Source of the DNA: Macrostomum lignano
Taxonomy: Eukaryota
Length of the DNA: 64,000 nt
Direction of reading: 5' to 3'
Assembly (NCBI GenBank): GCA_002269645.1
Contig: NIVC01000037.1
Location: forward strand, 62,001 to 126,000
The position numbers and the translations under genes were made by a program. This document shows, in pieces, positions 6,535-58,650 of this stretch (position 1 is its first letter; each line of letters starts with the position of its first letter). Below the pieces are notes generated by a model. The model did not search any database. It was not told the DNA's origin and worked only from the letters and a program-made list of their open reading frames with translations.

Positions 6535-6640
6535 AAGCACCAAGGCACAGACAGTGTACATGCCTGACGATTAGAAAGCCCGGGCCGCTGTACATGAGCC
6601 CGAGCGTGTGTATGAGAGCCTGTCTCTGCGTACAGTACTG
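6535..6640 (+). mobile_element. 3' half of a SINE-family copy split by the LINE; 5' half at about 4367-4407
   Basis: Rejoining at the TSD gives gcgattcacagccatgatggccaacc-aagcaccaaggc-acagacagtgtacatgcctgacgattagaaa, matching the other copies in the window. Confidence 0.7.
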
Positions 6641-17050: not shown

Positions 17051-17300
17051 GTCTGTCTGTCTGTCTGTCTGTCTGTACACCCTGTGTGAGCGTGTGTATG
17101 AGTGCCTGAGTACAGTATTGGCAGTGTGCTTGTGCAGTGTGCTCAAGAGTCGCCGAAATTTGCAGAATTGCCGCCAACGCTGGTTGTGGGACGATGCCGC
17201 CGAAGGCGTTGCGCCAGGGTGCCCGCAGTCCCCTGCCAATGCTAATTCTTTATTTAACACAGGGCTTGACATTGGCGCCTGTGTATCGAGCGCAAATTGA
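16745..17300 (+). mobile_element. tRNA-derived SINE-family copy with an internal (TCTG)n tract at about 16902-17075
   Basis: B-box-like ggttcgattc near 16805, core gcgattcacagccatgagggccaacccc, and tail ctgtacaccctgtgtgagcgtgtgtatgagtgcctg shared with other copies. Confidence 0.6.
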
Positions 17301-32877: not shown

Positions 32878-35438
32878 CTGCTCAGTGCTCATGCTGGCCC
32901 GCTTCTCACACAGTCCCTCAGTGCTCATGCTGTCCCCCTCCTTCTCACACAGTCCCTCAGTGCTCATGCTGTCCCCCTCCTTCTCACACAGTCCCTCAGT
33001 GCTCATGCTGCCCCCTCCTTCTCACACAGTCCCTCAGTGCTCATGCTGTCCCCCTCCTTCTCACACAGTCCCTCAGTGCTCATGCTGCCCCCTCCTTCTC
33101 ACACAGTCCCTCAGTGCTCATGCTGCCCCCTCCTTCTCACACAGTCCCTCAGTGCTCATGCTGCCCCCTCCTTCTCACACAGTCCCTCAGTGCTCATGCT
33201 GTCCCCCTCCTTCTCACACAGTCCCTCAGTGCTCATGCTGCCCCCCTCCTTCTCACACAGTCCCTCAGTGCTCATGCTGTCCCCTCCTTCTCACACAGTC
33301 CCTCAGTGCTCATGCTGTCTCCCTTTCTCACACAGTCCCTCAGTGCTCATGCTGTCCCCCTTTCTCACACAGTCCCTCAGTGCTCATGCTGTCCCCCTTT
33401 CTCACACAGTCCCTCAGTGCTCATGCTGTCCCCCTTTCTCACACAGTCCCTCAGTGCTCATGCTGTCCCCTCCTTCTCACACAGTCCCTCAGTGCTCATG
33501 CTGTCCCCCTTTCTCACACAGTCCCTCAGTGCTCATGCTGTCCCCCTTTCTCACACAGTCCCTCAGTGCTCATGCTGTCCCCCTTTCTCACACAGTCCCT
33601 CAGTGCTCATGCTGTCCCCCTTTCTCACACAGTCCCTCAGTGCTCATGCTGTCCCCTCCTTCTCACACAGTCCCTCAGTGCTCATGCTGTCCCCTCCTTC
33701 TCACACAGTCCCTCAGTGCTCATGCTGTCCCCCTTTCTCACACAGTCCCTCAGTGCTCATGCTGTCCCCCTTTCTCACACAGTCCCTCAGTGCTCATGCT
33801 GTCCGGCCTGTCCCCTCCTTCTCACACAGTCCCTCAGTGCTCATGCTGTCCCCTCCTTCTCACACAGTCCCTCAGTGCTCATGCTGTCCCCTCCTTCTCA
33901 CACAGTCCCTCAGTGCTCATGCTGTCCCCCTTTCTCACACAGTCCCTCAGTGCTCATGCTGTCCCCCTTTCTCACACAGTCCCTCAGTGCTCATGCTGTC
34001 CCCCTTTCTCACACAGTCCCTCAGTGCTCATGCTGTCCCCTCCTTCTCACACAGTCCCTCAGTGCTCATGCTGTCCCCTCCTTCTCACACAGTCCCTCAG
34101 TGCTCATGCTGTCCCCCTTTCTCACACAGTCCCTCAGTGCTCATGCTGCCCCCCTCCTTCTCACACAGTCCCTCAGTGCTCATGCTGTCCCCCTTTCTCA
34201 CACAGTCCCTCAGTGCTCATGCTGTCCCCCTTTCTCACACAGTCCCTCAGTGCTCATGCTGTCCCCTCCTTCTCACACAGTCCCTCAGTGCTCATGCTGT
34301 CCCCCTTTCTCACACAGTCCCTCAGTGCTCATGCTGTCCCCCTTTCTCACACAGTCCCTCAGTGCTCATGCTGTCCCCTCCTTCTCACACAGTCCCTCAG
34401 TGCTCATGCTGTCCCCCTCCTTCTCACACAGTCCCTCAGTGCTCATGCTGTCCCCTCCTTCTCACACAGTCCCTCAGTGCTCATGCTGTCCCCTCCTTCT
34501 CACACAGTCCCTCAGTGCTCATGCTGTCCCCCTTTCTCACACAGTCCCTCAGTGCTCATGCTGCCCCCCTCCTTCTCACACAGTCCCTCAGTGCTCATGC
34601 TGTCCCCCTTTCTCACACAGTCCCTCAGTGCTCATGCTGTCCCCCTTTCTCACACAGTCCCTCAGTGCTCATGCTGTCCGGCCTGTCCCCTCCTTCTCAC
34701 ACAGTCCCTCAGTGCTCATGCTGTCCCCTCCTTCTCACACAGTCCCTCAGTGCTCATGCTGTCCCCCTTTCTCACACAGTCCCTCAGTGCTCATGCTGCC
34801 CCCCTCCTTCTCACACAGTCCCTCAGTGCTCATGCTGTCCCCCTTTCTCACACAGTCCCTCAGTGCTCATGCTGTCCCCCTTTCTCACACAGTCCCTCAG
34901 TGCTCATGCTGTCCCCTCCTTCTCACACAGTCCCTCAGTGCTCATGCTGTCCCCCTTTCTCACACAGTCCCTCAGTGCTCATGCTGTCCCCCTTTCTCAC
35001 ACAGTCCCTCAGTGCTCATGCTGTCCCCCTTTCTCACACAGTCCCTCAGTGCTCATGCTGTCCCCCTCCTTCTCACACAGTCCCTCAGTGCTCATGCTGT
35101 CCCCTCCTTCTCACACAGTCCCTCAGTGCTCATGCTGTCCCCCTTTCTCACACAGTCCCTCAGTGCTCATGCTGTCCCCCTCCTTCTCACACAGTCCCTC
35201 AGTGCTCATGCTGTCCCCTCCTTCTCACACAGTCCCTCAGTGCTCATGCTGTCCCCCTTTCTCACACAGTCCCTCAGTGCTCATGCTGTCCCCCTTTCTC
35301 ACACAGTCCCTCAGTGCTCATGCTGTCCCCCTTTCTCACACAGTCCCTCAGTGCTCATGCTGTCCCCCTCCTTCTCACACAGTCCCTCAGTGCTCATGCT
35401 GTCCCCTCCTTCTCACACAGTCCCTCAGGCTCATGCTG
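32878..35438. repeat. 38-39-bp minisatellite (ttctcacacagtccctcagtgctcatgctgtcccctcc)n, about 65 copies
   Basis: Direct periodicity; source of the 790-890 aa spurious ORFs. Confidence 0.97.
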
Positions 35439-36732: not shown

Positions 36733-39700
36733 TCAGTCGCTCAGAGTCAGGGTTCCCAGCTGAGCCAGGACGACCGTCTTCACAGCGGAGCAGTCGGGAG
36801 CGATGCAGTACTCCGGACTGTCCAGCTGCTGCACCCGGAACTTGCTGATGGAGTCCAGCAGCCAGTCTCTGTTCAGCACTACGATGTCACCAGAGGCCGC
36901 GATGGCCTGGCAGCGGGCCTCGCTGAACTTCGCGTCGTCCTGGTCGGCCACGGCAACGCTCAGACGCCCGGCGGCCTGTCGGCGAGGCAGCGACTCCGGG
37001 CTGGCGGCGAACTGGCCGCCGCACTGCTGCACCAGAGTCTGCAGGGCGAAGCTCGGCATGTTGACGAAGTCGCCGACAGGAGCGATGCAGAACTGCTCCA
37101 GCAGCCGGGACGGACCGGGGCAGCGGTCGCGGCCGCTGCGGCTCCTGGCCGGGCCCAGGTGGTTCACGCCGCACGACAGGTCGCCCTGGATCTCGAAGTC
37201 CGACTCCGGCAGCAGCGAGCCGGCGGCCAGCGACTCCGACACCCAGTCGAAGCTCAGCAGCCACGCGCCGGACACGAGCGCCTGCGGGAAAGCGGGAAAG
37301 CGGCAGAGCTTTGCTCGCACTGTCTACGAGTATCAAGAGCCCTGAATTCATGGCGATGGCTGTTGAATTGAAATCGGTACCCAGGCCAAGAAGGGTCCGA
37401 GTCACTCGCGTCGCCCCAGAGTCGTTCCGGGTAACACAGGTAAAATAGGAAAGAAGTGAGACGTCCACGAGACGTCAGGGCACCACAGGTCGCCAAAAAG
37501 TCGTTAACCCATAGTCGTTTCAGAGTCGCAGACAATAAAGCGCTCAAAATTGACTCTTTGACTTTTGTAACTCAGGTGTTGCACTTTTGCAACACAGTCG
37601 CCTCTCGTGTTGCAGTCGTTTGAGTAGTTTACGAGCTATATACAGATTTTTTGTTGAATTCCTTCAAGAAATTGGACCCTGTGCTAAACGTCCTTTTAGC
37701 TTATACTGCTCGCGTTTCTTAGTTGCGCCCGCCGCCCAGTTAATTAGCTTACCTGAAAATACTTGAGCGTTCTCTCGCTGACCCTAGCAACCGAGCTCTC
37801 CCTGATGACCACGTGAGTGGTGTGACAGTTCGGGTCGAACTGGAAGCGGGTCTGATAGGCGCACCGATCGGAGTGCAGTTCGCACAGGCGTCTCAGCTCG
37901 GCCACCTGGCCGGGGTCCAGGCCGCTGCTGGTCACGTGGGCTGTCTGCGACATCGGCTGCTGGGGCCCCGACGCCTCCTTTAACTTGTCCGATGCTGACG
38001 CCATCGGTGGCAGCATCCGGCCTGTGAGCACGCGGAACGAGTCGCTGGCGAATTCCGGCATGCCGGCCAGCACGGCGTCGATGTTGTCGGGCGAGGCCTC
38101 CGCCGGCTCGTCCTCCTGCTTGCATCGACGCGTTGGCTGCCTGCGACGCTTCAAAGCCGTCGCCTGCTGCTGCTGTGGCGGCTGCTTCTGCGGTCGACGC
38201 GACAGACGAAAAATGGCTGTGCTGCGACGCGGCTGCCGCGCGGTGAGCACCACGGGGCCGGCGTCGGCCACGGGATCGGCGTTATCAACGGTAGACGTTG
38301 TCTGCATGTGCCGGCTCAGCCGGGCGAACGGCCGCTTTAATCGCTTCATTGTGGCCTTCCAGCCGCCTCGGATTGGCGCGCATCCAACTGCCGAAGTTGA
38401 GGTCGACGCAGGATCGGCTTGGCCGTTGTCGGCCTCTTCAGCGAATAGATCCAGCTCCTCCTCGTCATCGTTGTTTTCGTCGTCCGTGACGTCGATATCG
38501 AGATCGACATTGGAATTTTGCGCTACTGGCGGCTCTTCCAAAACTAAGCGACGCTTCCGGCCGCTGCCGCTGTTGACATTGCTGGCCGAGGCGGCGGAAG
38601 CAGCAAATTTAACCACCTTCTCAGGCTTGGCTCTTGGTTCAGCCTCTTCTTCTTTATCTGCAGCCTTTGAATTTGCCGCATCAGCCGGTGCCAAGTTGTC
38701 TTGCTGAGCTCTAAGAAATATTCGCGTTTAAAGAATATCAACGATTAGCAATACCCAAAGGGGGGCAACCGTGCTAGTCCTATATACTAAAAAATTAGCA
38801 CTGCCAGAGGCACCCAAAATAGGCAATATGCTAGTCTTCTTATATACGCATACTCGTATTAATTTTCGACACTGAAAAGTGGCACGTACCCCTGTTGAGC
38901 GGGAGCACTGTGCCGCCTGTTGTTCTCGGCGGCTTGTTGCTTGTCGTTCGCTTCAGCGGATTTGCAGCCGCTCTCTTCAATCACAAGAACAAATCGTTCA
39001 ACCTCGTCCATCTCGCGCAGAAATTTGGCCATCTTCAGTTCGCCTTCATCTTTATTTGAGTTGGCTCCAACCGGGTGGCTGCGCCTGGCTGACGGTTTGG
39101 CCCGCTTTGGCGGTGTCGGAGGCTCAGTAGGTACCGCCGCGTCAGCGGAGTGGCGAGACGCCCTGGCCAGAGTCTTATTGAATGGCTGCAGAGGCGGCCT
39201 AGCACCATCTGACGTGGAGACTACTGCTGTTGATAGGTTTTCAGCATCGCCTATATTCGGATGGCGGGAACCAGTGGCAGATATTGTTGCTTTTGCTGCT
39301 GCTGTGGTTGCTTTAGTTTGTTTAGCCTCGACGGCGCCCATGTTGTCAACTGGTTCAGCTGTCAGCCTGCGCGAGATGGCTGAAATGAGACGCGAGGAAA
39401 TAGTCAAGTAATAATAGCGAAGTACAAACTGTAGGACTTCCTAAATACTTGTACATGTAGCCATTGTTATTGGGTTTTTACTGTACCGATTTCTGCAGTT
39501 ATCACACTTCTGATAGATGTAAATGAAAATACAGGATTTTAGCCTAACATGATGGGTGTTTACAATTGTGAATAAAACTACTCTATAAACTGTCTTATCC
39601 TTAACAATCACAGCGTGTTAAGTATTGTCACACAACCATCTAGAGGCATTACTGCCAACTTCGCCGACTCCCCTGAGCAGGCACAGGCACACAAGCGCGC

Positions 39701-40189: not shown

Positions 40190-40494
40190 GCCAATAATAG
40201 TGACCAACTGCGGGACTGTTTGATTAGAGAAATGCACTGATTGGTTTCACTTGTGCGTGCTTGTGGATAATCCATTAACACTAGCTGCGCGCGGTCAGAA
40301 CCTTAACATTCTGCTTCTACCATAGACATATGAATATGATATATAAATATGCCGCATTATTTGTTAGTAAAGTGTGCCTCACAGAATTACACTTACACAC
40401 ACACAGATCATGCATAAGCACTAGCTTACAGTGAAACCCCTTTCTGTCAAAGCATCTTTTAAATAGACTTTAGCCTCGGAGACAGGTAGCACAG

Positions 40495-41482: not shown

Positions 41483-44400
41483 TTAAAAGTCATCAAACAG
41501 AGACAGTCGAATTCTCTGCCTTGTCAGAATCTCCGTCACGTCGTAGCAGTCGGGAGCGATGCAGTACTCCGGACTGTCCAGCTGCTGCACCCGGAACTTG
41601 CTGATGGAGTCCAGCAGCCAGTCTCTGTTCAGCACCACGATGTCACCGGAGGCCGCGATGGCCTGGCAGCGGGCCTCGCTGAACTTCGCGTCGTCCTGGT
41701 CGGCCACGGCGACGCTCAGACACCCGGTGGCCTGTCGGCGAGGCAGCGACTCCGGGCTGGCGGCGAACTGGCCGCCGCACTGCTGCACCAGAGTCTGCAG
41801 GGCGAAGCTCGGCATGTTGACGAAGTCGCCCACAGGAGCGATGCAGAACTGCTCCAGCAGCCGGGACGGACCGGGGCAGCGGTCGCGGCCGCCGCGGCTC
41901 CTGGCCGGGCCCAGGTGGTTCACGCCGCACGACAGGTCGCCCTGGATCTCGAAGTCCGACTCCGGCAGCAGCGAGCCGGCGGCCAGCGACTCCGACACCC
42001 AGTCGAAGCTCAGCAGCCACGCGCCGGACACGAGCGCCTGCGGGATACGCACGAGAAATGGAACCAGTTTTGGCCATAGACAGTTCAGCTCCAAAATGGC
42101 AATTTTTTTCGTTTTATTGCCAGTTCATTAGCATAGGGAACCACTCTTGAACTTTCCCACTTAGATCATGCAGATTCCCCCCTCCATCAAATTACACACA
42201 AAAAATGATGATGTTGTCTAACTGAAAGCGATCAGCCTCACAGGTAAATGACAATTGAATTAGTAAATCAAATTTTATTGAAAGTCATAAATTTTTCTAC
42301 AAACAGAAAGGTTTTCAAAACTTAATTGAAATGAAAAGCATTCAAAGTCAAATCAGAGTCGTTGAAATGCAAATTAAAGCTCCACGCGGTGACACGCTGT
42401 TGGCAGTCGGAACACCTCGTCCTGGGAGTCGAGAAGGTCGCGTTGAAACTCTTGCATTGTGGCTGCCAGGCGGTGCCCGTCGGCACTCAACGATAGAGTC
42501 CATCGCTGCTCCACTGAGCAGGCCCAGCTGGCGGCGGCTTCATCCTTCAGAACCCGAACAGCCAGCGCTTCAACAAAGTCGCCGCCGCGATCGCTTCGAA
42601 GCCACAGCTGCCACTGCCGGCTGTAGCCGTGCTGCAGCACCTCGGTGAACCGGCCTGGCCCTTGCAGCAGCTGGTTGGGCGGCTGCAAGACCTGGTCGAC
42701 GCCGATAGCAAAGTCTTTCCGTCGGTTGAATTCGTCCAACTCCAGCCGCTCGCAGTGCCGCAGCCCCAACGGCGGCCAGATGCGTTCGACAATGAAAGCG
42801 CAGCCGAGTCGCTCGCTCAGGTAGACAGCGGGCGCCGAGCCTTGGCCGGGCGTCAGGACGCTGAGCGAGGCCGAGACGGCGACGTCGAAGTTTTGTTCAT
42901 TGGCGAAGGTCCAACTGTCGCTAGCGGTAGAGGAGGCGGCGGCTGTGGCTGTGCGAACGCGGACTTTCCAAGCGTCTCGTCGCCTGCCGCTGTCCGAGGC
43001 GGCGACTGCGCAGTCGGTCGGCGGCACGGCTGCTCCTTTTGATGACGACGATTGGCCGGCGGGGAACCCGTAAAATCCGCCTGCGCCGCCGCCCCCGCTG
43101 ACGGACATCCATCGGGCCAGCAGGCGGCGCTGCATCGGCGACAGTCGGCCAGCTTCGGCACCCAATAGCATTGGCGCCGCTGGCACTAGCGAGAGCAGCG
43201 ACAGCAATCCTATTAGAAGCAGCAAGACTGACTGACTCGGCAACATTGTGTCTCTTGTTGTTATTGCTGCTGCTGTTGGTGTTGCGATGAACTGAGAGCA
43301 GCAATCCTTGCCTGCAGCTTTCTGTCTGTAAGTCTAATCCCTGCTATGCAGTTCGGACATAGACATTACTGTGCGAGCTGGAGAGCTGGCTCTGCCATAG
43401 ATTAAAAACCAACTAATCCCCCAAGGCACAGATAATTAATAACAAATATCTATTCGCTGATTACACTACTCATGATGAGAGAAGTAGTAAGTTGACGATT
43501 TCGTCTTTCAAGAATTAAGAATTGGATGAAACAGTGTTACATGCATGACGATTAGAAATCCAGGGCCGCTGTAAACCCTGTGTGAGCGCGTGCCTGCGTA
43601 TAGTTTTGGCGCGCTTGTATAGATTGTGGGACGATGTCGTCGATAGCGTTGCGCCAGGGTTTGGGTGCCCCAAAGCGGTCTTTGCAGTGACCTTCAAGTG
43701 ACCCATTTTGGCCTATGGACAGTGCAACCGCTTACCTGGAAATACTTGAGCGTCCTCTCGCTAACCCTGGACATAGACGAGCTCTCCCTAATGATGACGT
43801 GGGTAGTGTGCAGTTCGGGATCGAACTGGAACCGGGCCTGGTAGACGCAGCAGCCGGAGTGGGCCTCGCACAGCCGCCTCAGCCGGGCAACCTCTGTTGG
43901 ATCGAGGCCGCTGCTAGTGATCAGCAGTCTCCGCCTTAGCCTAGGAGGCGGCGGAGTTGACATCTGCGGCGATTCGGACTCCGGCTGCTCCAACAGTTGT
44001 CGGACATTTTTTATTTCCTCTTCAATTTTGCGAACCTCGGCGTCCAGTTCGCGACGCTGCGGTGTGGCCAGGACTAGGGACACCTGCTCGGAGTCCTGCT
44101 GCTGCACTCCGCGATCCTCGGAGACGGGGCTTTCAATAACGTCGGCGTTGGTCTCAACTGAGGATGATGGGATACAGACAGGCGGCGGCATCATGGCGCT
44201 GTCAGCTTCCTTGCCCTCGTCTGGATCTGTTGCTTCCTGCTCCTCATCACTGTCGCCGAGGTTTTCCAGCTGGCGACGGAGTTTAGCCGGCAGGCTGCGT
44301 CGTAGCCGACGCGCCCTCGCCATCAGGATGGTGCTGTGCCTGGCCCGCCGGCCGATCAGCACCACCGGCTCGTGTCCGCCAATGCCGAGGCCTTTACGAA

Positions 44401-46665
44401 GCCGTTTCTGTAGCTTAGCCTGGCGGCCGATTTTAGCATTGCCGATGGCCGACGTTGAAGCGGCGGCAGCGCCAGCGGCAGCCGCGGTGGCGCTTTCTGA
44501 ACTGCGACGACGCCAGTTGAAGGTGACGGCTGAGGCCCAACCGAGCGGCACCTTTGAAGTTTTAATAATAGAATCTAATTAATAATATTATTGTTAGCTG
44601 ACTCCTGAACACATACAAGCGCCAATGCTGTACGTAGGCACTCGTACACACGCTCACACAGGGTGTACGGGAGCACAAGAATTGCCCGCCGAGGTTTTCC
44701 CGCAATCCTTTTATCTTTTTAATCTTTTTATTAGGACTTACTACGAGCGTAAGCCAAGGACAATCCAAGAGAGGGGTCAATAAAGCTCATGCATAAGTAG
44801 TGAATGCCACCTCTTGGCACGGCTTAGTAACAAAAGTGAATTAAACGTCAAACACTAACCTGGATCTTTGACCCGCCGCTTTTGTCGCCGTTGCTGTCGC
44901 CGCCGCTGCCAGCAGGCAGGCACTGGCGCAGCAGGCGGCCTAGCAGACCGCGTCGCTGCCTTCGCCGACAGAGCGCACTAGCTGGAGTTGTTGGCAGCCT
45001 CGACGGGATCGAGGTGTCTAGGCTGGCGAGAGACTGGCGCGCCTGCGGCTGCTGCTGCACCTCTGCTAGTGCCGATTCCTGAGCAGAGTGATGACGGCTC
45101 TCTTCTTCCAGCTTCTCGCTTTGTCGGCGCTGCTCCTGGAGCCGGCAATCTGCGGTAAGCGAGAGTAGCGGCGGAGACAGTGCGGATTGGGTGCTAGAAA
45201 TTGGGAGACTGGATTATCAGAGACTAGATTATCAGAGACTGGATTATCAGAGACTGGATTATCAGTGACTGGATTATCAGAGACTGGATTATCAGTGACT
45301 GGATTATCAGAGACTGGATTATAGAGACTGGATTATCAGTGACTGGATTATCAGAGACTGGATTATCAGAGACTGGATTATAGAGACTGGATTATCAGTG
45401 ACTGAATTATCAGAGAATGGATTATCAGTGACTGGATTATCAGTGACTGGATTATCAGTGACTGGATTATCAGAGACTGGATTATCAGTGACTGGATTAT
45501 CAGTGACTGGATTATCAGTGACTGGATTATCAGAGACTGGATTATCAGTGACTGGATTATCAGAGACTGGATTATAGAGACTGGATTATCAGTGACTGGA
45601 TTATCAGAGACTGGATTATCAGAGACTGGATTATAGAGACTGGATTATCAGTGACTGAATTATCAGAGAATGGATTATCAGTGACTGGATTATCAGTGAC
45701 TGGATTATCAGTGACTGGATTATCAGAGACTGGATTATCAGTGACTGGATTATCAGAGACTGGATTATCAGTGACTGGATTATCAGAGACTGGATTATCA
45801 GTGACTGGATTATCAGAGACTGGATTATAGAGACTGGATTATCAGTGACTGGATTATCAGAGACTGGATTATCAGAGACTGGATTATAGAGACTGGATTA
45901 TCAGTGACTGAATTATCAGAGAATGGATTATCAGTGACTGGATTATCAGTGACTGGATTATCAGTGACTGGATTATCAGAGACTGGATTATCAGTGACTG
46001 GATTATCAGTGACTGGATTATCAGTGACTGGATTATCAGAGACTGGATTATCAGAGACTGGATTATCAGTGACTAGATTATCAGAGACTGGATTATCACT
46101 GACTGGATTATCACTGACTGGATTATCAGAGACTGGATTATCAGTGACTGGATTATCAGTGACTGGATTATCAGTGACTAGATTATCAGAGACTGGATTA
46201 TCAGTGCCTGGATTATCAGAGACTGGATTATCAGTGACTAGATTATCAGAGACTGGATTATAAGTTATGGGATTATCATAATATCAGTGACTGGATTATC
46301 AGAATATCAGTGACTTGGATTTCAAGCAACATTGTGTAGAGCATGGGTTACATACAACATGATGATAAAGTCAAGGGCCACTGCACACCATTTATGAGTA
46401 AGCAGTTGCACACACAACTGTATACATGCTCATGGTCAGTATATTCGAAATAACTAATCGATACCTTGCACACTACTGCAAGTTGACTGCCAACCAACTA
46501 TAGGGTAGCAAATCAAATATATAAATCACACAATTTAAGATCCATCAGACACTCCCAAGATTGTACACAAAAAATCTTACCTTCATCATAGGCATTAATA
46601 ACATCTTGTAATTTTGATATTAACGACTTGATGCATTCAGCTTGAGTAGAAGTTGAGGGAGCCAT
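41483..46665 (-). CDS. BRCA1: BRCA1-like gene, copy B; exons 46665-46581, 45149-44860, 44551-43736, 42037-41483 (about 581 aa); no RING found
   Basis: Same tandem BRCT with the intron at KYFQ|ALV. Coiled coil LDAEVRKIEEEIKNVRQLLEQ resembles BRCA1 [21 protein letters not shown]. N-terminal helix IKSLISKLQDVINAYDED. Phases 1/0/0; total 1746 nt, in frame. Confidence 0.75.
42374..43246 (-). CDS. Intronless secreted ependymin-related (EPDR-like) protein, 290 aa, nested in intron 3 of BRCA1-like B
   Basis: Signal peptide MLPSQSVLLLLIGLLSLLSLVPA. Cys spacing PTDC...HCERLEL...ACSVEQ...DEVFRLPTAC parallels EPDR (QCSKMTL, DCYPVQ, DPSVFTPPSTC). AATAAA (minus strand) at 42279-42274. Confidence 0.65.
   Translation of the reverse strand: MLPSQSVLLLLIGLLSLLSLVPAAPMLLGAEAGRLSPMQRRLLARWMSVSGGGGAGGFYGFPAGQSSSSKGAAVPPTDCAVAASDSGRRRDAWKVRVRTATAAASSTASDSWTFANEQNFDVAVSASLSVLTPGQGSAPAVYLSERLGCAFIVERIWPPLGLRHCERLELDEFNRRKDFAIGVDQVLQPPNQLLQGPGRFTEVLQHGYSRQWQLWLRSDRGGDFVEALAVRVLKDEAAASWACSVEQRWTLSLSADGHRLAATMQEFQRDLLDSQDEVFRLPTACHRVEL
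45205..46315. repeat. 15-bp minisatellite (gactggattatcaga/gt)n with a ~253-bp higher-order period, in intron 1 of BRCA1-like B
   Basis: The variant actgaattatcagagaatgg recurs at about 45401, 45654 and 45907. Confidence 0.95.
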
Positions 46666-46949
46666 TTCAAAGACTGAAATTAGTGAAAGATTAGTGAAAG
46701 ATTACACAAACTTAGTTATTATCATTTCTTTGTATTTCATTCAATGTTTTCTCATATTTTTTTAAAAAATATCTAATATGATAAAAAATAGGTACATTTG
46801 AATCCATACTCTTAAGAACCTCATCCTAAATAGAATTCACTTTTATAATAACTATAGCTCACATTGAAATCTTTTATTAGAAGTTTAAAGTATAAACACA
46901 ATTATAATAAATTAAAAGAAAAAAATGGAAATATAGAAAATTGAAACTA

Positions 46950-58521: not shown

Positions 58522-58650
58522 TACACAGGCAGGCACTCACACACACGCTCACACAGGGTGTACAGCAGCCCCGAATTTCTAATCGTCAGGCATGTACACT
58601 CTCTGTTGGGTTGGCCCTCATGGGTGAAATCGGACGACATTCAAGTTTCA
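58522..58650 (-). mobile_element. SINE-family core copy abutting the foldback MITE
   Basis: Minus strand catgagggccaacccaacagagagtgtacatgcctgacgattagaaattcggggctgctgtacaccctgtgtgagcg. Confidence 0.7.

What the first reader, a model, noticed from the sequence alone, without database searches (positions are those of the whole stretch)
42274..43291. Intronless ependymin-like gene nested on the same strand inside the BRCT-splitting intron
Seen: a 290-aa signal-peptide ORF with EPDR-like Cys spacing and its own AATAAA (42279-42274) sits in the intron that cuts B's first BRCT at KYFQ|ALV. The equivalent intron of copy A (471 bp) has no such gene. A 3' splice site (ctctcag|43291) lies 45 nt upstream of its ATG, stop-free and in phase 0, the same phase as B's donor at 43736. 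Inference: a retrocopy or young insertion. It could cause intronic polyadenylation or a BRCA1-half-BRCT/EPDR fusion transcript, switching off B's phosphopeptide binding. The phase match alone has a 1-in-3 chance of being coincidence.
Basis: partly seen in the sequence, partly recalled or inferred. Interest (0 to 1): 0.7.

Follow-up and report, generated by a model that had tools for sequence, protein, structure and literature searches.

The report
Orphan secreted-protein gene nested in intron
A real-looking, already annotated flatworm (Macrostomum lignano) gene for a small secreted protein with no known relatives sits inside the last intron of a BRCA1-like gene; it is not an ependymin, and nested genes of this kind are ordinary.

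Summary
The window is Macrostomum lignano DNA. Every positional claim checks out. A 290-codon intronless ORF (43246-42374, minus strand) has a hydrophobic signal-like N-terminus and an AATAAA about 95 nt after its stop. It lies on the same strand inside the 1,698-nt intron that splits the first BRCT domain of BRCA1-like gene B at KYFQ|ALV. Tandem paralog A has a 471-nt intron there and no such gene.

The ORF is probably coding. Only 1 of 3,000 shuffles reaches its length. Its codon-position GC matches the local exons. It is the only frame of six with a positive codon score. A second genomic copy differs by 3 synonymous and 1 nonsynonymous change, with no indels. GenBank already annotates it as a hypothetical protein.

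"Ependymin-like" is not supported: no PF00811 hit, hhalign probability 0.13%, and -2 bits with filters off. The cysteine count is wrong and there are no glycosylation sites. An exhaustive search of 1.84 billion proteins finds only itself. AlphaFold models were too poor to test the fold.

"Retrocopy or young insertion" has no support either: no poly(A) tail, no target-site duplication, no parent gene, and the nesting is present in both genomic copies.

The acceptor 45 nt upstream is at least as well explained as a spliced-leader trans-splice site, as at neighbouring genes A and B. The interference model remains untested. Interest is low.

The parts
42374..43246 (-). Nested intronless ORF: 290 aa plus stop. 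It encodes an orphan protein with a signal-like N-terminus, a G/A/S-rich stretch (residues 26-78), and a beta-rich region with 5 Cys.
   Evidence: Searches show the ORF. It is annotated in GenBank as a hypothetical protein; the 99.7% identical paralog is PAA73452.1, BOX15_Mlig002011g1. The shuffle test gives 1 of 3,000. GC by codon position is 0.68/0.52/0.73, like the local exons. It is the only frame with a positive codon log-likelihood ratio. Against L001 it shows 3 synonymous and 1 nonsynonymous change and no indels.
43177..43246 (-). Putative signal peptide, about residues 1-23/25 (MLPSQSVLLLLIGLLSLLSLVPAAP).
   Evidence: It is the single strong hydrophobic peak, KD15 = 3.01 at residues 7-21. 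AlphaFold predicts a helix at residues 4-19 with the only pLDDT above 70 in the model. No SignalP run was available.
43247..43293 (-). Candidate 5' UTR (43291-43247) and its 3' splice acceptor, TCTCAG|43291 (AG at 43293-43292). It lies 45 nt upstream of the ATG, in frame and stop-free.
   Evidence: It differs by one position from the published SL trans-splice acceptor motif [T/C]TNCAG (PMC8629364). The SL ends in ATG, which would be in frame and add MFIATPTAAAITTRDT. Its use is inferred, not shown.
42274..42279 (-). AATAAA poly(A) signal of the nested gene, 95 nt after the stop codon.
   Evidence: It is intact in the second genomic copy. Its use is not shown.
42038..43735 (-). Last intron of host gene B: 1,698 nt, GTAAGC...CCCGCAG, phase 0. 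It contains the nested gene as a GC-rich island (64%) between AT-rich flanks (46% and 36%).
   Evidence: The junction is used in UniProt models A0A1I8IDV1 and A0A1I8IHY7.
43736..44551 (-). Host gene B exon 3. It encodes the first half of BRCT1, including the S-G and T-x-K phosphopeptide-pocket positions (SSGL..., ERTLKYFQ).
41483..42037 (-). Host gene B exon 4 (the last exon). It encodes the second half of BRCT1, BRCT2 and the stop codon.
   Evidence: It is 98.6% identical to the last exon of copy A.
44860..46665 (-). Host gene B exons 1 (46665-46581) and 2 (45149-44860), with intron 1 between them. TTTCAG|46673 lies 8 nt upstream of the ATG.
   Evidence: tblastn of P0126 and sequence reading.
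37282..37752 (-). Equivalent intron of tandem paralog A: 471 nt, same KYFQ|ALV position, no nested ORF.

Best explanation
This is an independent, lineage-restricted (orphan) protein-coding gene of Macrostomum lignano. It is nested on the same strand in the last intron of a BRCA1-C-terminus-like gene (B).

It encodes a 290-aa precursor with a cleavable signal peptide, a short low-complexity linker, and a cysteine-containing, beta-rich domain of about 210 aa. The product is most likely secreted or luminal, and its biochemical function is unknown.

The likely mechanism has three steps, all inferred.
1. The gene is made as its own mRNA. Its 5' end forms at or near the acceptor TCTCAG|43291, most plausibly by spliced-leader trans-splicing of a transcript that starts inside the intron.
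2. Its 3' end forms at the AATAAA at 42279.
3. The host removes the whole unit by ordinary splicing from 43736 to 42037.

What is shown: the ORF, its statistical and compositional coding signature, the host exon junction, and the presence of the arrangement in two genomic copies. What is inferred: the signal peptide, the ends of the mRNA, and its independence from host transcription.
For: The ORF is far longer than chance.
- Only 1 of 3,000 shuffles reaches 290 codons.
- It has no internal stop, while the other five frames carry 4-8 stops each over the same span.

Its composition looks like coding sequence.
- GC by codon position matches the neighbouring exons.
- Its frame is the only one with a positive codon log-likelihood ratio: +8 bits against -25 to -130.
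- It is a GC-rich island within an AT-rich intron.

A second genomic copy is collinear at 98.7%. That copy differs by 3 synonymous and 1 nonsynonymous change, where 74% nonsynonymous is expected by chance. It has no indels in the ORF, while the 3' flank has 5 indel columns.

The protein and gene features fit a stand-alone gene.
- There is a single N-terminal hydrophobic peak directly after the first ATG.
- AATAAA lies 95 nt after the stop codon.
- The transcript-based GenBank annotation (StringTie/TACO, TBONE and TransDecoder; PMC5730564) calls exactly this CDS at both loci.

The host intron is real. The spliced product is a contiguous BRCA1 BRCT (E = 6e-29). The Pfam BRCT hit spans the junction. 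Two UniProt models use the same junction.

SL trans-splicing is common in this species, and neighbouring genes A and B have close-range acceptors before their ATGs.
Against: - There is no homolog anywhere and no Pfam domain.
- AlphaFold confidence is very low, with pLDDT 39 and 34.
- The codon score is only marginally positive, and it is negative over roughly the first 100 codons.
- The synonymous-to-nonsynonymous contrast rests on four substitutions, giving p of about 0.07.
- The GenBank CDS could have been called by TransDecoder on an unspliced host pre-mRNA, because the nested ORF is the longest ATG-ORF there. Annotation is therefore not proof of an independent mRNA.
- The protein was not found in any Logan transcriptome-derived source.
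- The gene ID was not found in four sets of supplementary expression tables.
- The n-region of the signal peptide lacks a basic residue.
Confidence: 0.65

Rival explanations
1. This is a highly diverged ependymin-related (LolA-fold) secreted lipid-binding protein. It would be recognisable only at the level of three-dimensional structure.
For: - It has a signal peptide followed by a mainly beta-strand domain of about 210 aa running from the first Cys to the C-terminus. EPDR1 has about 182 aa over the same span.
- The only segment hhalign or hmmsearch align is the family's C-terminal motif: ORF DEVFRLPTAC against EPDR DPSVFTPPSTC.
- The distance from the first to the second Cys is 70, against 71 between EPDR1 C45 and C116.
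Against: - PF00811 is not reported even at E <= 1. The family-wide survey defines EPDRs by PF00811 at E <= 1e-5 plus conserved Cys (PMC6280359), and even sponge EPDRs are detected by pfam00811 (PMC10470211).
- hhalign probability is 0.13%.
- Unfiltered hmmsearch gives -2.0 bits.
- phmmer against the PDB and Foldseek give no EPDR1 or LolA hit.
- The Cys number is odd (5), there is no N-glycosylation sequon, and invariant EPDR motifs (PC.AP.QWEGR, DIP.NST, VQEWSDR) are absent.
Confidence: 0.05
2. This is not a gene. It would be a fortuitous or decaying open frame in a GC-rich stretch of the host intron, annotated only because TransDecoder picked the longest ORF on an intron-retaining transcript of gene B.
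For: - It is an orphan.
- Structure predictions are poor.
- The N-terminal third is low-complexity and has a negative codon score.
- Overlapping ORFs of 102-137 aa in other frames show that the segment is stop-poor.
- The two public annotations are mutually exclusive. GenBank calls the ORF but not B, and UniProt/WormBase calls B but not the ORF.
- There is no trace in Logan sources or expression tables.
Against: - The shuffle test gives 1 of 3,000.
- The frame has no internal stop, against 4-8 stops in each other frame.
- The frame-specific codon signal and codon-position GC are exon-like.
- All three silent differences fall at third positions, and the ORF has no indels.
- A signal-peptide-like segment follows the first ATG immediately, and a poly(A) signal lies at a normal 3' UTR distance.
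Confidence: 0.22
3. The ORF is an alternative 3'-terminal exon of gene B. The donor at 43736 would splice to the acceptor at 43291. This would give a protein with half a BRCT domain fused in frame to the 305-residue ORF-encoded tail and polyadenylated inside the intron. It would lower the output of full-length B.
For: - The donor and the acceptor are both phase 0, and the 45-nt bridge is stop-free.
- According to work cited in PMC8629364, an acceptor that has a cis donor upstream tends to be cis-spliced rather than trans-spliced. On a host pre-mRNA this join is therefore mechanistically possible.
- Shared-5'-exon nested loci do exist, for example the cholinergic locus (from my own knowledge).
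Against: - No annotated model or database protein contains the fusion.
- The phase match has a prior of 1 in 3, and four in-frame stop-free AG sites exist.
- The fusion would place a signal-peptide-like hydrophobic helix in the middle of a nuclear BRCT protein and truncate the BRCT fold.
- The ORF starts with its own ATG followed by the hydrophobic core, which suggests independent translation.
- The authentic acceptor at 42037 has a better pyrimidine tract.
Confidence: 0.08

Closest known systems
Same-strand nested (intronic) protein-coding genes of metazoans
   Same: A complete small gene, with its own start codon, stop codon and poly(A) signal, lies inside an intron of a larger unrelated host gene. 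The host must splice across it. The paralogous host copy lacks it.
   Different: Here the organism uses SL trans-splicing. The nested gene's 5' end may therefore be made by trans-splicing rather than, or as well as, by a conventional capped start. The nested gene has no relatives, and its expression has not been shown.
Cholinergic gene locus (VAChT/unc-17 nested in the first intron of ChAT/cha-1, sharing a 5' exon). This comparison is from my own knowledge and was not tested here.
   Same: The nested gene is on the same strand. Its acceptor can be joined to a host donor.
   Different: In the cholinergic locus the shared exon is non-coding and the two products are functionally linked. Here the host donor lies in the middle of a BRCT coding exon, and the two products are unrelated. 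No junction evidence exists.
SL trans-spliced genes and polycistronic transcriptional units of M. lignano (Wudarski 2017, PMC5730564; Ustyantsev and Berezikov 2021, PMC8629364)
   Same: An AG acceptor lies shortly upstream of the ATG. TCTCAG at -45 differs from the motif YTNCAG at one position. Neighbouring genes have acceptors at -8 and -18. The species' SL ends in ATG. About 7% of transcripts are precursors that contain several genes.
   Different: The described operons are tandem, not nested. No SL read has been tied to this site with the tools available.
Ependymin-related proteins (Pfam PF00811; EPDR1 structures 6E7O and 6JLD)
   Same: A secretory signal, similar domain length, beta-rich prediction, and a C-terminal VFxxPxxC-like motif.
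   Different: There is no profile or sequence similarity. The Cys count is wrong. There is no glycosylation sequon. There is an extra low-complexity stretch of about 50 aa before the first Cys.
Taxonomically restricted (orphan) secreted proteins of Macrostomum, a genus in which reproduction-related genes evolve rapidly (PMC7336406)
   Same: A short secreted protein with no detectable homolog outside the species' own duplicated genome copies.
   Different: No tissue or expression information is available for this gene. The link to reproduction is only an analogy.

Membership tests
Ependymin / EPDR (PF00811) | A match to the Pfam ependymin profile. The family survey PMC6280359 uses E <= 1e-5. 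| tested here: not met
   PF00811 is not reported even at E <= 1. hhalign against 20 EPDR1 sequences gives probability 0.13%. hmmsearch --max gives -2.0 bits.
Ependymin / EPDR (PF00811) | Four (or six) conserved cysteines forming two (or three) intramolecular disulfides at conserved positions. | tested here: not met
   The ORF has 5 Cys at 79, 149, 165, 243 and 285, with gaps 70/16/78/42. EPDR1 gaps are 46/25/59/38/12. Only the first and last distances can be made to fit.
Ependymin / EPDR (PF00811) | A secreted glycoprotein: signal peptide plus N-glycosylation sequons. | tested here: inconclusive
   A signal-like N-terminus is present, but there is no N-x-S/T sequon at all.
Ependymin / EPDR (PF00811) | A LolA-like fold: a curved antiparallel sheet of 11 strands forming a hydrophobic pocket. 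| tested here: inconclusive
   The AlphaFold single-sequence models have pLDDT 39 and 34. Foldseek against the PDB gives a best E of 0.18 with no EPDR1 or LolA hit. The model is too poor to decide, and no alignment can be built for an orphan.
Processed retrocopy | A poly(A) tract following the 3' end, flanking target-site duplications, and an intron-containing parent gene elsewhere. | tested here: not met
   No A-run follows the AATAAA at 42279. The only A7 run sits 4 nt after the second AATAAA. Direct repeats are at chance level. No paralog exists in 1.84 billion protein representatives. The M. lignano genome itself could not be searched at the DNA level.
Nested intronic gene (same strand) | A complete ORF with its own start, stop and poly(A) signal lying wholly within an intron of a bona fide host gene. 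| tested here: met
   The host junction is verified. The ORF and its signals lie within 43735-42038.
Nested intronic gene (same strand) | Independent expression of the nested unit. | not testable with these tools
   The only evidence is indirect. The transcript-based GenBank annotation calls the CDS. No read-level data were accessible.
SL trans-spliced gene of M. lignano | [quoted passage not shown] | tested here: inconclusive
   TCTCAG|43291 has one mismatch to the motif. An exact TTACAG|43325 lies 79 nt upstream but is out of frame with the SL ATG.
BRCA1-type tandem BRCT protein (host gene B) | Two BRCT repeats with the S-G ... T-x-K phosphopeptide pocket. | tested here: met
   E = 6e-29 to BRCA1 BRCT structures. 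SSGL and ERTLKYF align with the BRCA1 SG and T-L-K positions. Pfam BRCT scores 28.3 bits, above the 21.3 cut-off.

The most novel reading that the evidence does not exclude
A young, taxonomically restricted secreted-protein gene has become established inside the BRCT-splitting intron of only one of two tandem BRCA1-like paralogs. Its processing inside the host pre-mRNA (SL trans-splicing at 43291 and cleavage at the intronic poly(A) site) would compete with host splicing from 43736 to 42037. Expression of the nested gene and of full-length paralog B would then be mutually exclusive. This would act as a built-in switch that separates the functions of duplicated DNA-repair genes in a regenerating, recently polyploid flatworm.
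Probability: 0.1. Interest if true: 0.5.

Novelty: new member of a known kind. Interest (0 to 1): 0.2.

Why it matters
As it stands, the result matters mostly for annotation. At this locus the two public gene sets are each incomplete. GenBank has the nested ORF but not host gene B. UniProt/WormBase has B but not the ORF. The 'ependymin' label should not be propagated.

If the ORF is truly expressed, it is one more orphan secreted protein of Macrostomum. It would also be a tidy case for studying how a same-strand nested gene is handled in an organism with SL trans-splicing. Only the competition model would be of wider interest, and it has no evidence yet.

Tried and rejected
- Ependymin membership: rejected. 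I tested it with Pfam, PDB phmmer, hhalign against a purpose-built EPDR1 alignment, an unfiltered hmmsearch, and Cys and glycosylation features.
- Structure route: uninformative. Two AlphaFold runs (full length and residues 72-290) both gave pLDDT below 40. Foldseek against the PDB gave nothing significant.
- Homolog search: only the protein itself and its 99.7% identical copy came back, from both the word-indexed search and the exhaustive phmmer of 1.84 billion representatives.
- Retrocopy hallmarks: none found. I looked for a poly(A) tail, target-site duplications and a parent gene.
- Defining an insertion by aligning the A and B introns: impossible, because the introns share no similarity.
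- Outgroup paralog to decide gain versus loss: P0005 is only another B-like model and is not on record with DNA.
- Expression tables: the gene ID was not found in full-text search or in the supplements of four M. lignano papers.
- Other features in the region: there is no Rfam family and no SL RNA gene in the window. No Pfam hit exists for the overlapping alternative-frame or antisense ORFs. P0126 (570 aa) was checked as a possible B-ORF fusion and is not one; it is simply a longer model of B.
Full report
IDENTITY OF THE WINDOW. The 290-aa ORF is an exact match to a GenBank protein on Macrostomum lignano contig NIVC01000037.1 (assembly GCA_002269645.1). A copy that is 289/290 identical, PAA73452.1 ('hypothetical protein BOX15_Mlig002011g1'), lies on NIVC01001010.1. 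The window is therefore nuclear DNA of a free-living flatworm with a recently duplicated genome. The species uses spliced-leader (SL) trans-splicing.

CHECK OF THE OBSERVATION. Reading the minus strand and listing ORFs confirms every positional statement.
- The ORF runs from the ATG at 43246 to the stop at 42376-42374.
- AATAAA lies at 42279-42274, which is 95 nt after the stop. A second AATAAA lies at 42118-42113.
- The host donor is ...TAT TTC CAG|GTAAGC, with 43736 as the last exon base and phase 0.
- The host acceptor is CCCGCAG|GCG CTC GTG, with the exon starting at 42037.
- The intron is 1,698 nt long.
- TCTCAG|43291 lies 45 nt upstream of the ATG, and the 15 intervening codons are open.
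- Copy A has its intron at the same KYFQ|ALV position (37752-37282, 471 nt). It has no similarity to the ORF.

THE HOST GENE IS REAL. Splicing the two host exons in silico gives a continuous BRCA1-type tandem BRCT. The match to human BRCA1 BRCT crystal structures has E = 6e-29, and the alignment runs straight through the junction. The S-G and T-x-K pocket positions are conserved. The spliced product is 100% identical to UniProt A0A1I8IDV1 (380 aa). A longer model, A0A1I8IHY7 (570 aa), uses the same junction.

Mapping the longer model gives the full host gene in the window.
- The four exons are 46665-46581, 45149-44860, 44551-43736 and 42037-41483.
- All four are flanked by GT-AG.
- The frame is intact and encodes 581 aa.
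- The nested ORF lies in the last intron.

The Pfam BRCT hit on the host (28.3 bits, above the cut-off) covers residues 365-415. It therefore spans the junction at 396/397.

IS THE ORF A GENE OR CHANCE?
- Length. Only 1 of 3,000 dinucleotide-preserving shuffles of the intron gives an ATG-ORF of 290 codons or more. The mean is 112 and the 99.9th percentile is 261. Across the same 291 codons, the other five frames carry 4-8 stops each.
- Composition. GC at codon positions 1/2/3 is 0.68/0.52/0.73. This is the same rank order and magnitude as the A and B exons: 0.65, 0.46-0.50 and 0.70-0.89.
- Codon usage. A codon log-likelihood score was trained on only 876 codons of the A and B exons. It is positive only in the ORF's own frame: +8 bits against -25 to -130. 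The signal is weak, and it is negative over the G/A/S-rich first third.
- Setting. The ORF is a 64% GC island between intron flanks of 46% and 36% GC.
- Conservation. The second genomic locus, L001, is collinear over 5 kb at 98.7% identity, including the host exons, the intron and the nested ORF. Within the ORF there are four substitutions. Three are synonymous and at third positions, and one is Q188K. The random expectation is 74% nonsynonymous, which gives p of about 0.07. There are no indels in the ORF, while the 336-nt 3' flank has five indel columns.
- Protein features. The protein begins with one strong hydrophobic segment, VLLLLIGLLSLLSLV (KD15 = 3.01, against at most 1.20 elsewhere), followed by PAAP. 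This is the layout of a signal peptide.
- Annotation. The GenBank gene set is transcript-derived (StringTie/TACO, then TBONE cutting at SL and poly(A) evidence, then TransDecoder; PMC5730564). Some assembled transcript therefore contains the ORF. That transcript could be an intron-retaining host pre-mRNA on which this is simply the longest ORF.

I put the probability that this is a genuine protein-coding gene at about 0.7-0.75.

IS IT AN EPENDYMIN? No evidence supports this.
- Pfam does not report PF00811 even at E <= 1.
- phmmer against all PDB sequences at E <= 10 lists no EPDR1.
- I verified a human EPDR1 sequence against PDB 6E7O (100% identity). I then collected 283 family members and aligned 20 that span mammals to sharks.
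- hhalign of the ORF against that profile gives probability 0.13%. It aligns only 18 C-terminal residues, DEVFRLPTAC against DPSVFTPPSTC.
- hmmsearch with all filters off gives -2.0 bits. BLASTP gives nothing.
- The invariant EPDR motifs are absent.
- The ORF has five cysteines, not four or six. Only two inter-Cys distances can be made to fit. There is no N-x-S/T sequon.

The family-wide survey defines EPDRs by PF00811 at E <= 1e-5 plus conserved cysteines (PMC6280359). Even sponge members are recognised by pfam00811 (PMC10470211). A negative result for a flatworm protein is therefore meaningful.

The fold could not be tested. Two AlphaFold single-sequence models have pLDDT 39 and 34. Foldseek on the first gives nothing, with a best E of 0.18 and TM of at most 0.17. 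The models do predict a mostly beta domain, which is compatible with many folds. A structure-only relationship keeps a residual probability of about 5%.

IS IT A RETROCOPY OR A YOUNG INSERTION?
- No homolog other than the near-identical second copy exists among 5.8 billion clustered proteins (word-indexed search) or 1.84 billion representatives (exhaustive phmmer). No parent gene is therefore visible.
- No A-tract follows the poly(A) signal, and the flanking direct repeats are at chance level.
- The arrangement is shared by both genomic copies.
- The A and B introns cannot be aligned, and the adjoining upstream exons are only 79% identical. Neither an insertion boundary nor a direction (gain in B or loss in A) can be inferred.
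- Being intronless carries little weight in a locus where genes have only three introns.

HOW IT MOST LIKELY WORKS. About 30% of M. lignano genes are SL trans-spliced at [T/C]TNCAG acceptors, and the 35-nt SL ends in ATG (PMC8629364). About 7% of assembled transcripts are multi-gene precursors (PMC5730564).

At this locus, gene B has TTTCAG 8 nt before its ATG and gene A has CCGCAG 18 nt before its ATG. The nested ORF's TCTCAG at -45 fits that architecture.

The most economical reading has four parts.
1. The nested gene yields its own mRNA.
2. The 5' end of that mRNA is made at or near 43291, probably by SL addition to a transcript that starts inside the intron.
3. The 3' end is made at the AATAAA at 42279.
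4. The host splices across the whole unit.

On a host pre-mRNA the same acceptor would have a cis donor upstream. However, no database protein shows such a fusion, and the product would be an implausible BRCT fragment with an internal signal-like helix. The SL ATG would be in frame at 43291 and would add MFIATPTAAAITTRDT. That is a curiosity with a prior of 1 in 3.

COMPARISON WITH WHAT IS KNOWN, AND VERDICT. This is a same-strand nested intronic gene, a well-known arrangement in animal genomes, and it encodes an orphan secreted-type protein. The CDS is already in GenBank as a hypothetical protein.

The contributions here are modest.
- The nesting relationship is identified. Neither public annotation shows both genes.
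- The full four-exon host model is defined.
- The ependymin and retrocopy readings are rejected.
- SL trans-splicing is offered as the likelier role of the upstream acceptor.

Interest is low, at about 0.2. The only reading that would raise it is competition between nested-gene processing and host splicing as a switch between the two BRCA1-like paralogs. That reading has no evidence yet, and I give it a probability of about 0.1.

Noticed in passing
window 41545-42045 versus 36789-37289; L001 16031-16531: The last coding exons of tandem paralogs B and A are 98.6% identical, starting 8 nt upstream of the acceptor. The preceding exons are only 79% identical, and the introns cannot be aligned. B's last exon is 99.8% identical to A's last exon at the other genomic locus. 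This looks like exon-limited gene conversion among the four copies.
   Followed up: partly
window 46673-46675 and 40207-40209 (minus strand); 41483-40207: Gene B has an exact SL-acceptor motif, TTTCAG, 8 nt before its ATG. Gene A has CCGCAG 18 nt before its ATG. The B-to-A spacer is about 1.3 kb, of which about 0.4 kb is a 63-bp tandem repeat. B and A may form one trans-spliced transcriptional unit, that is, an operon.
   Followed up: no
window 41483-46665 (minus strand); L001 and L002: The two public annotations disagree. The transcript-based GenBank set calls the nested ORF and the 700-aa gene A but not gene B, at either locus. UniProt/WormBase models call B (380 and 570 aa) and A (652 aa) but not the nested ORF.
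   Followed up: partly
window 45205-46261: A tandem array of about 71 copies of a 15-bp unit (GAGACTGGATTATCA) lies inside intron 1 of gene B. Its length differs between the two genomic copies.
   Followed up: no
window 32881-35438: A large tandem array of a 37-38-bp unit, about 67 copies at 94% identity, produces spurious ORFs of about 800-900 aa in three frames on the + strand.
   Followed up: no
window 43531-43592; also 58542-58600 and 6551-6592: A dispersed repeat of about 60 bp (88-91% identity) lies in the intron's 5' flank upstream of the nested ORF and recurs elsewhere in the window. A second fragment of about 37 bp (43624-43660) matches 17184-17220.
   Followed up: no
window about 52914 and beyond (+ strand; L002 1-333): GenBank calls a 957-aa THAP / TNP-like (P-element-type) transposase gene about 6 kb upstream of gene B.
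   Followed up: no
P0126 versus window 41483-42037: UniProt model A0A1I8IHY7 lacks 11 residues (TGCLSVAVADQ) of BRCT2 relative to the window's exon 4. This is either a difference between copies or a mis-called mini-intron in the older assembly.
   Followed up: no
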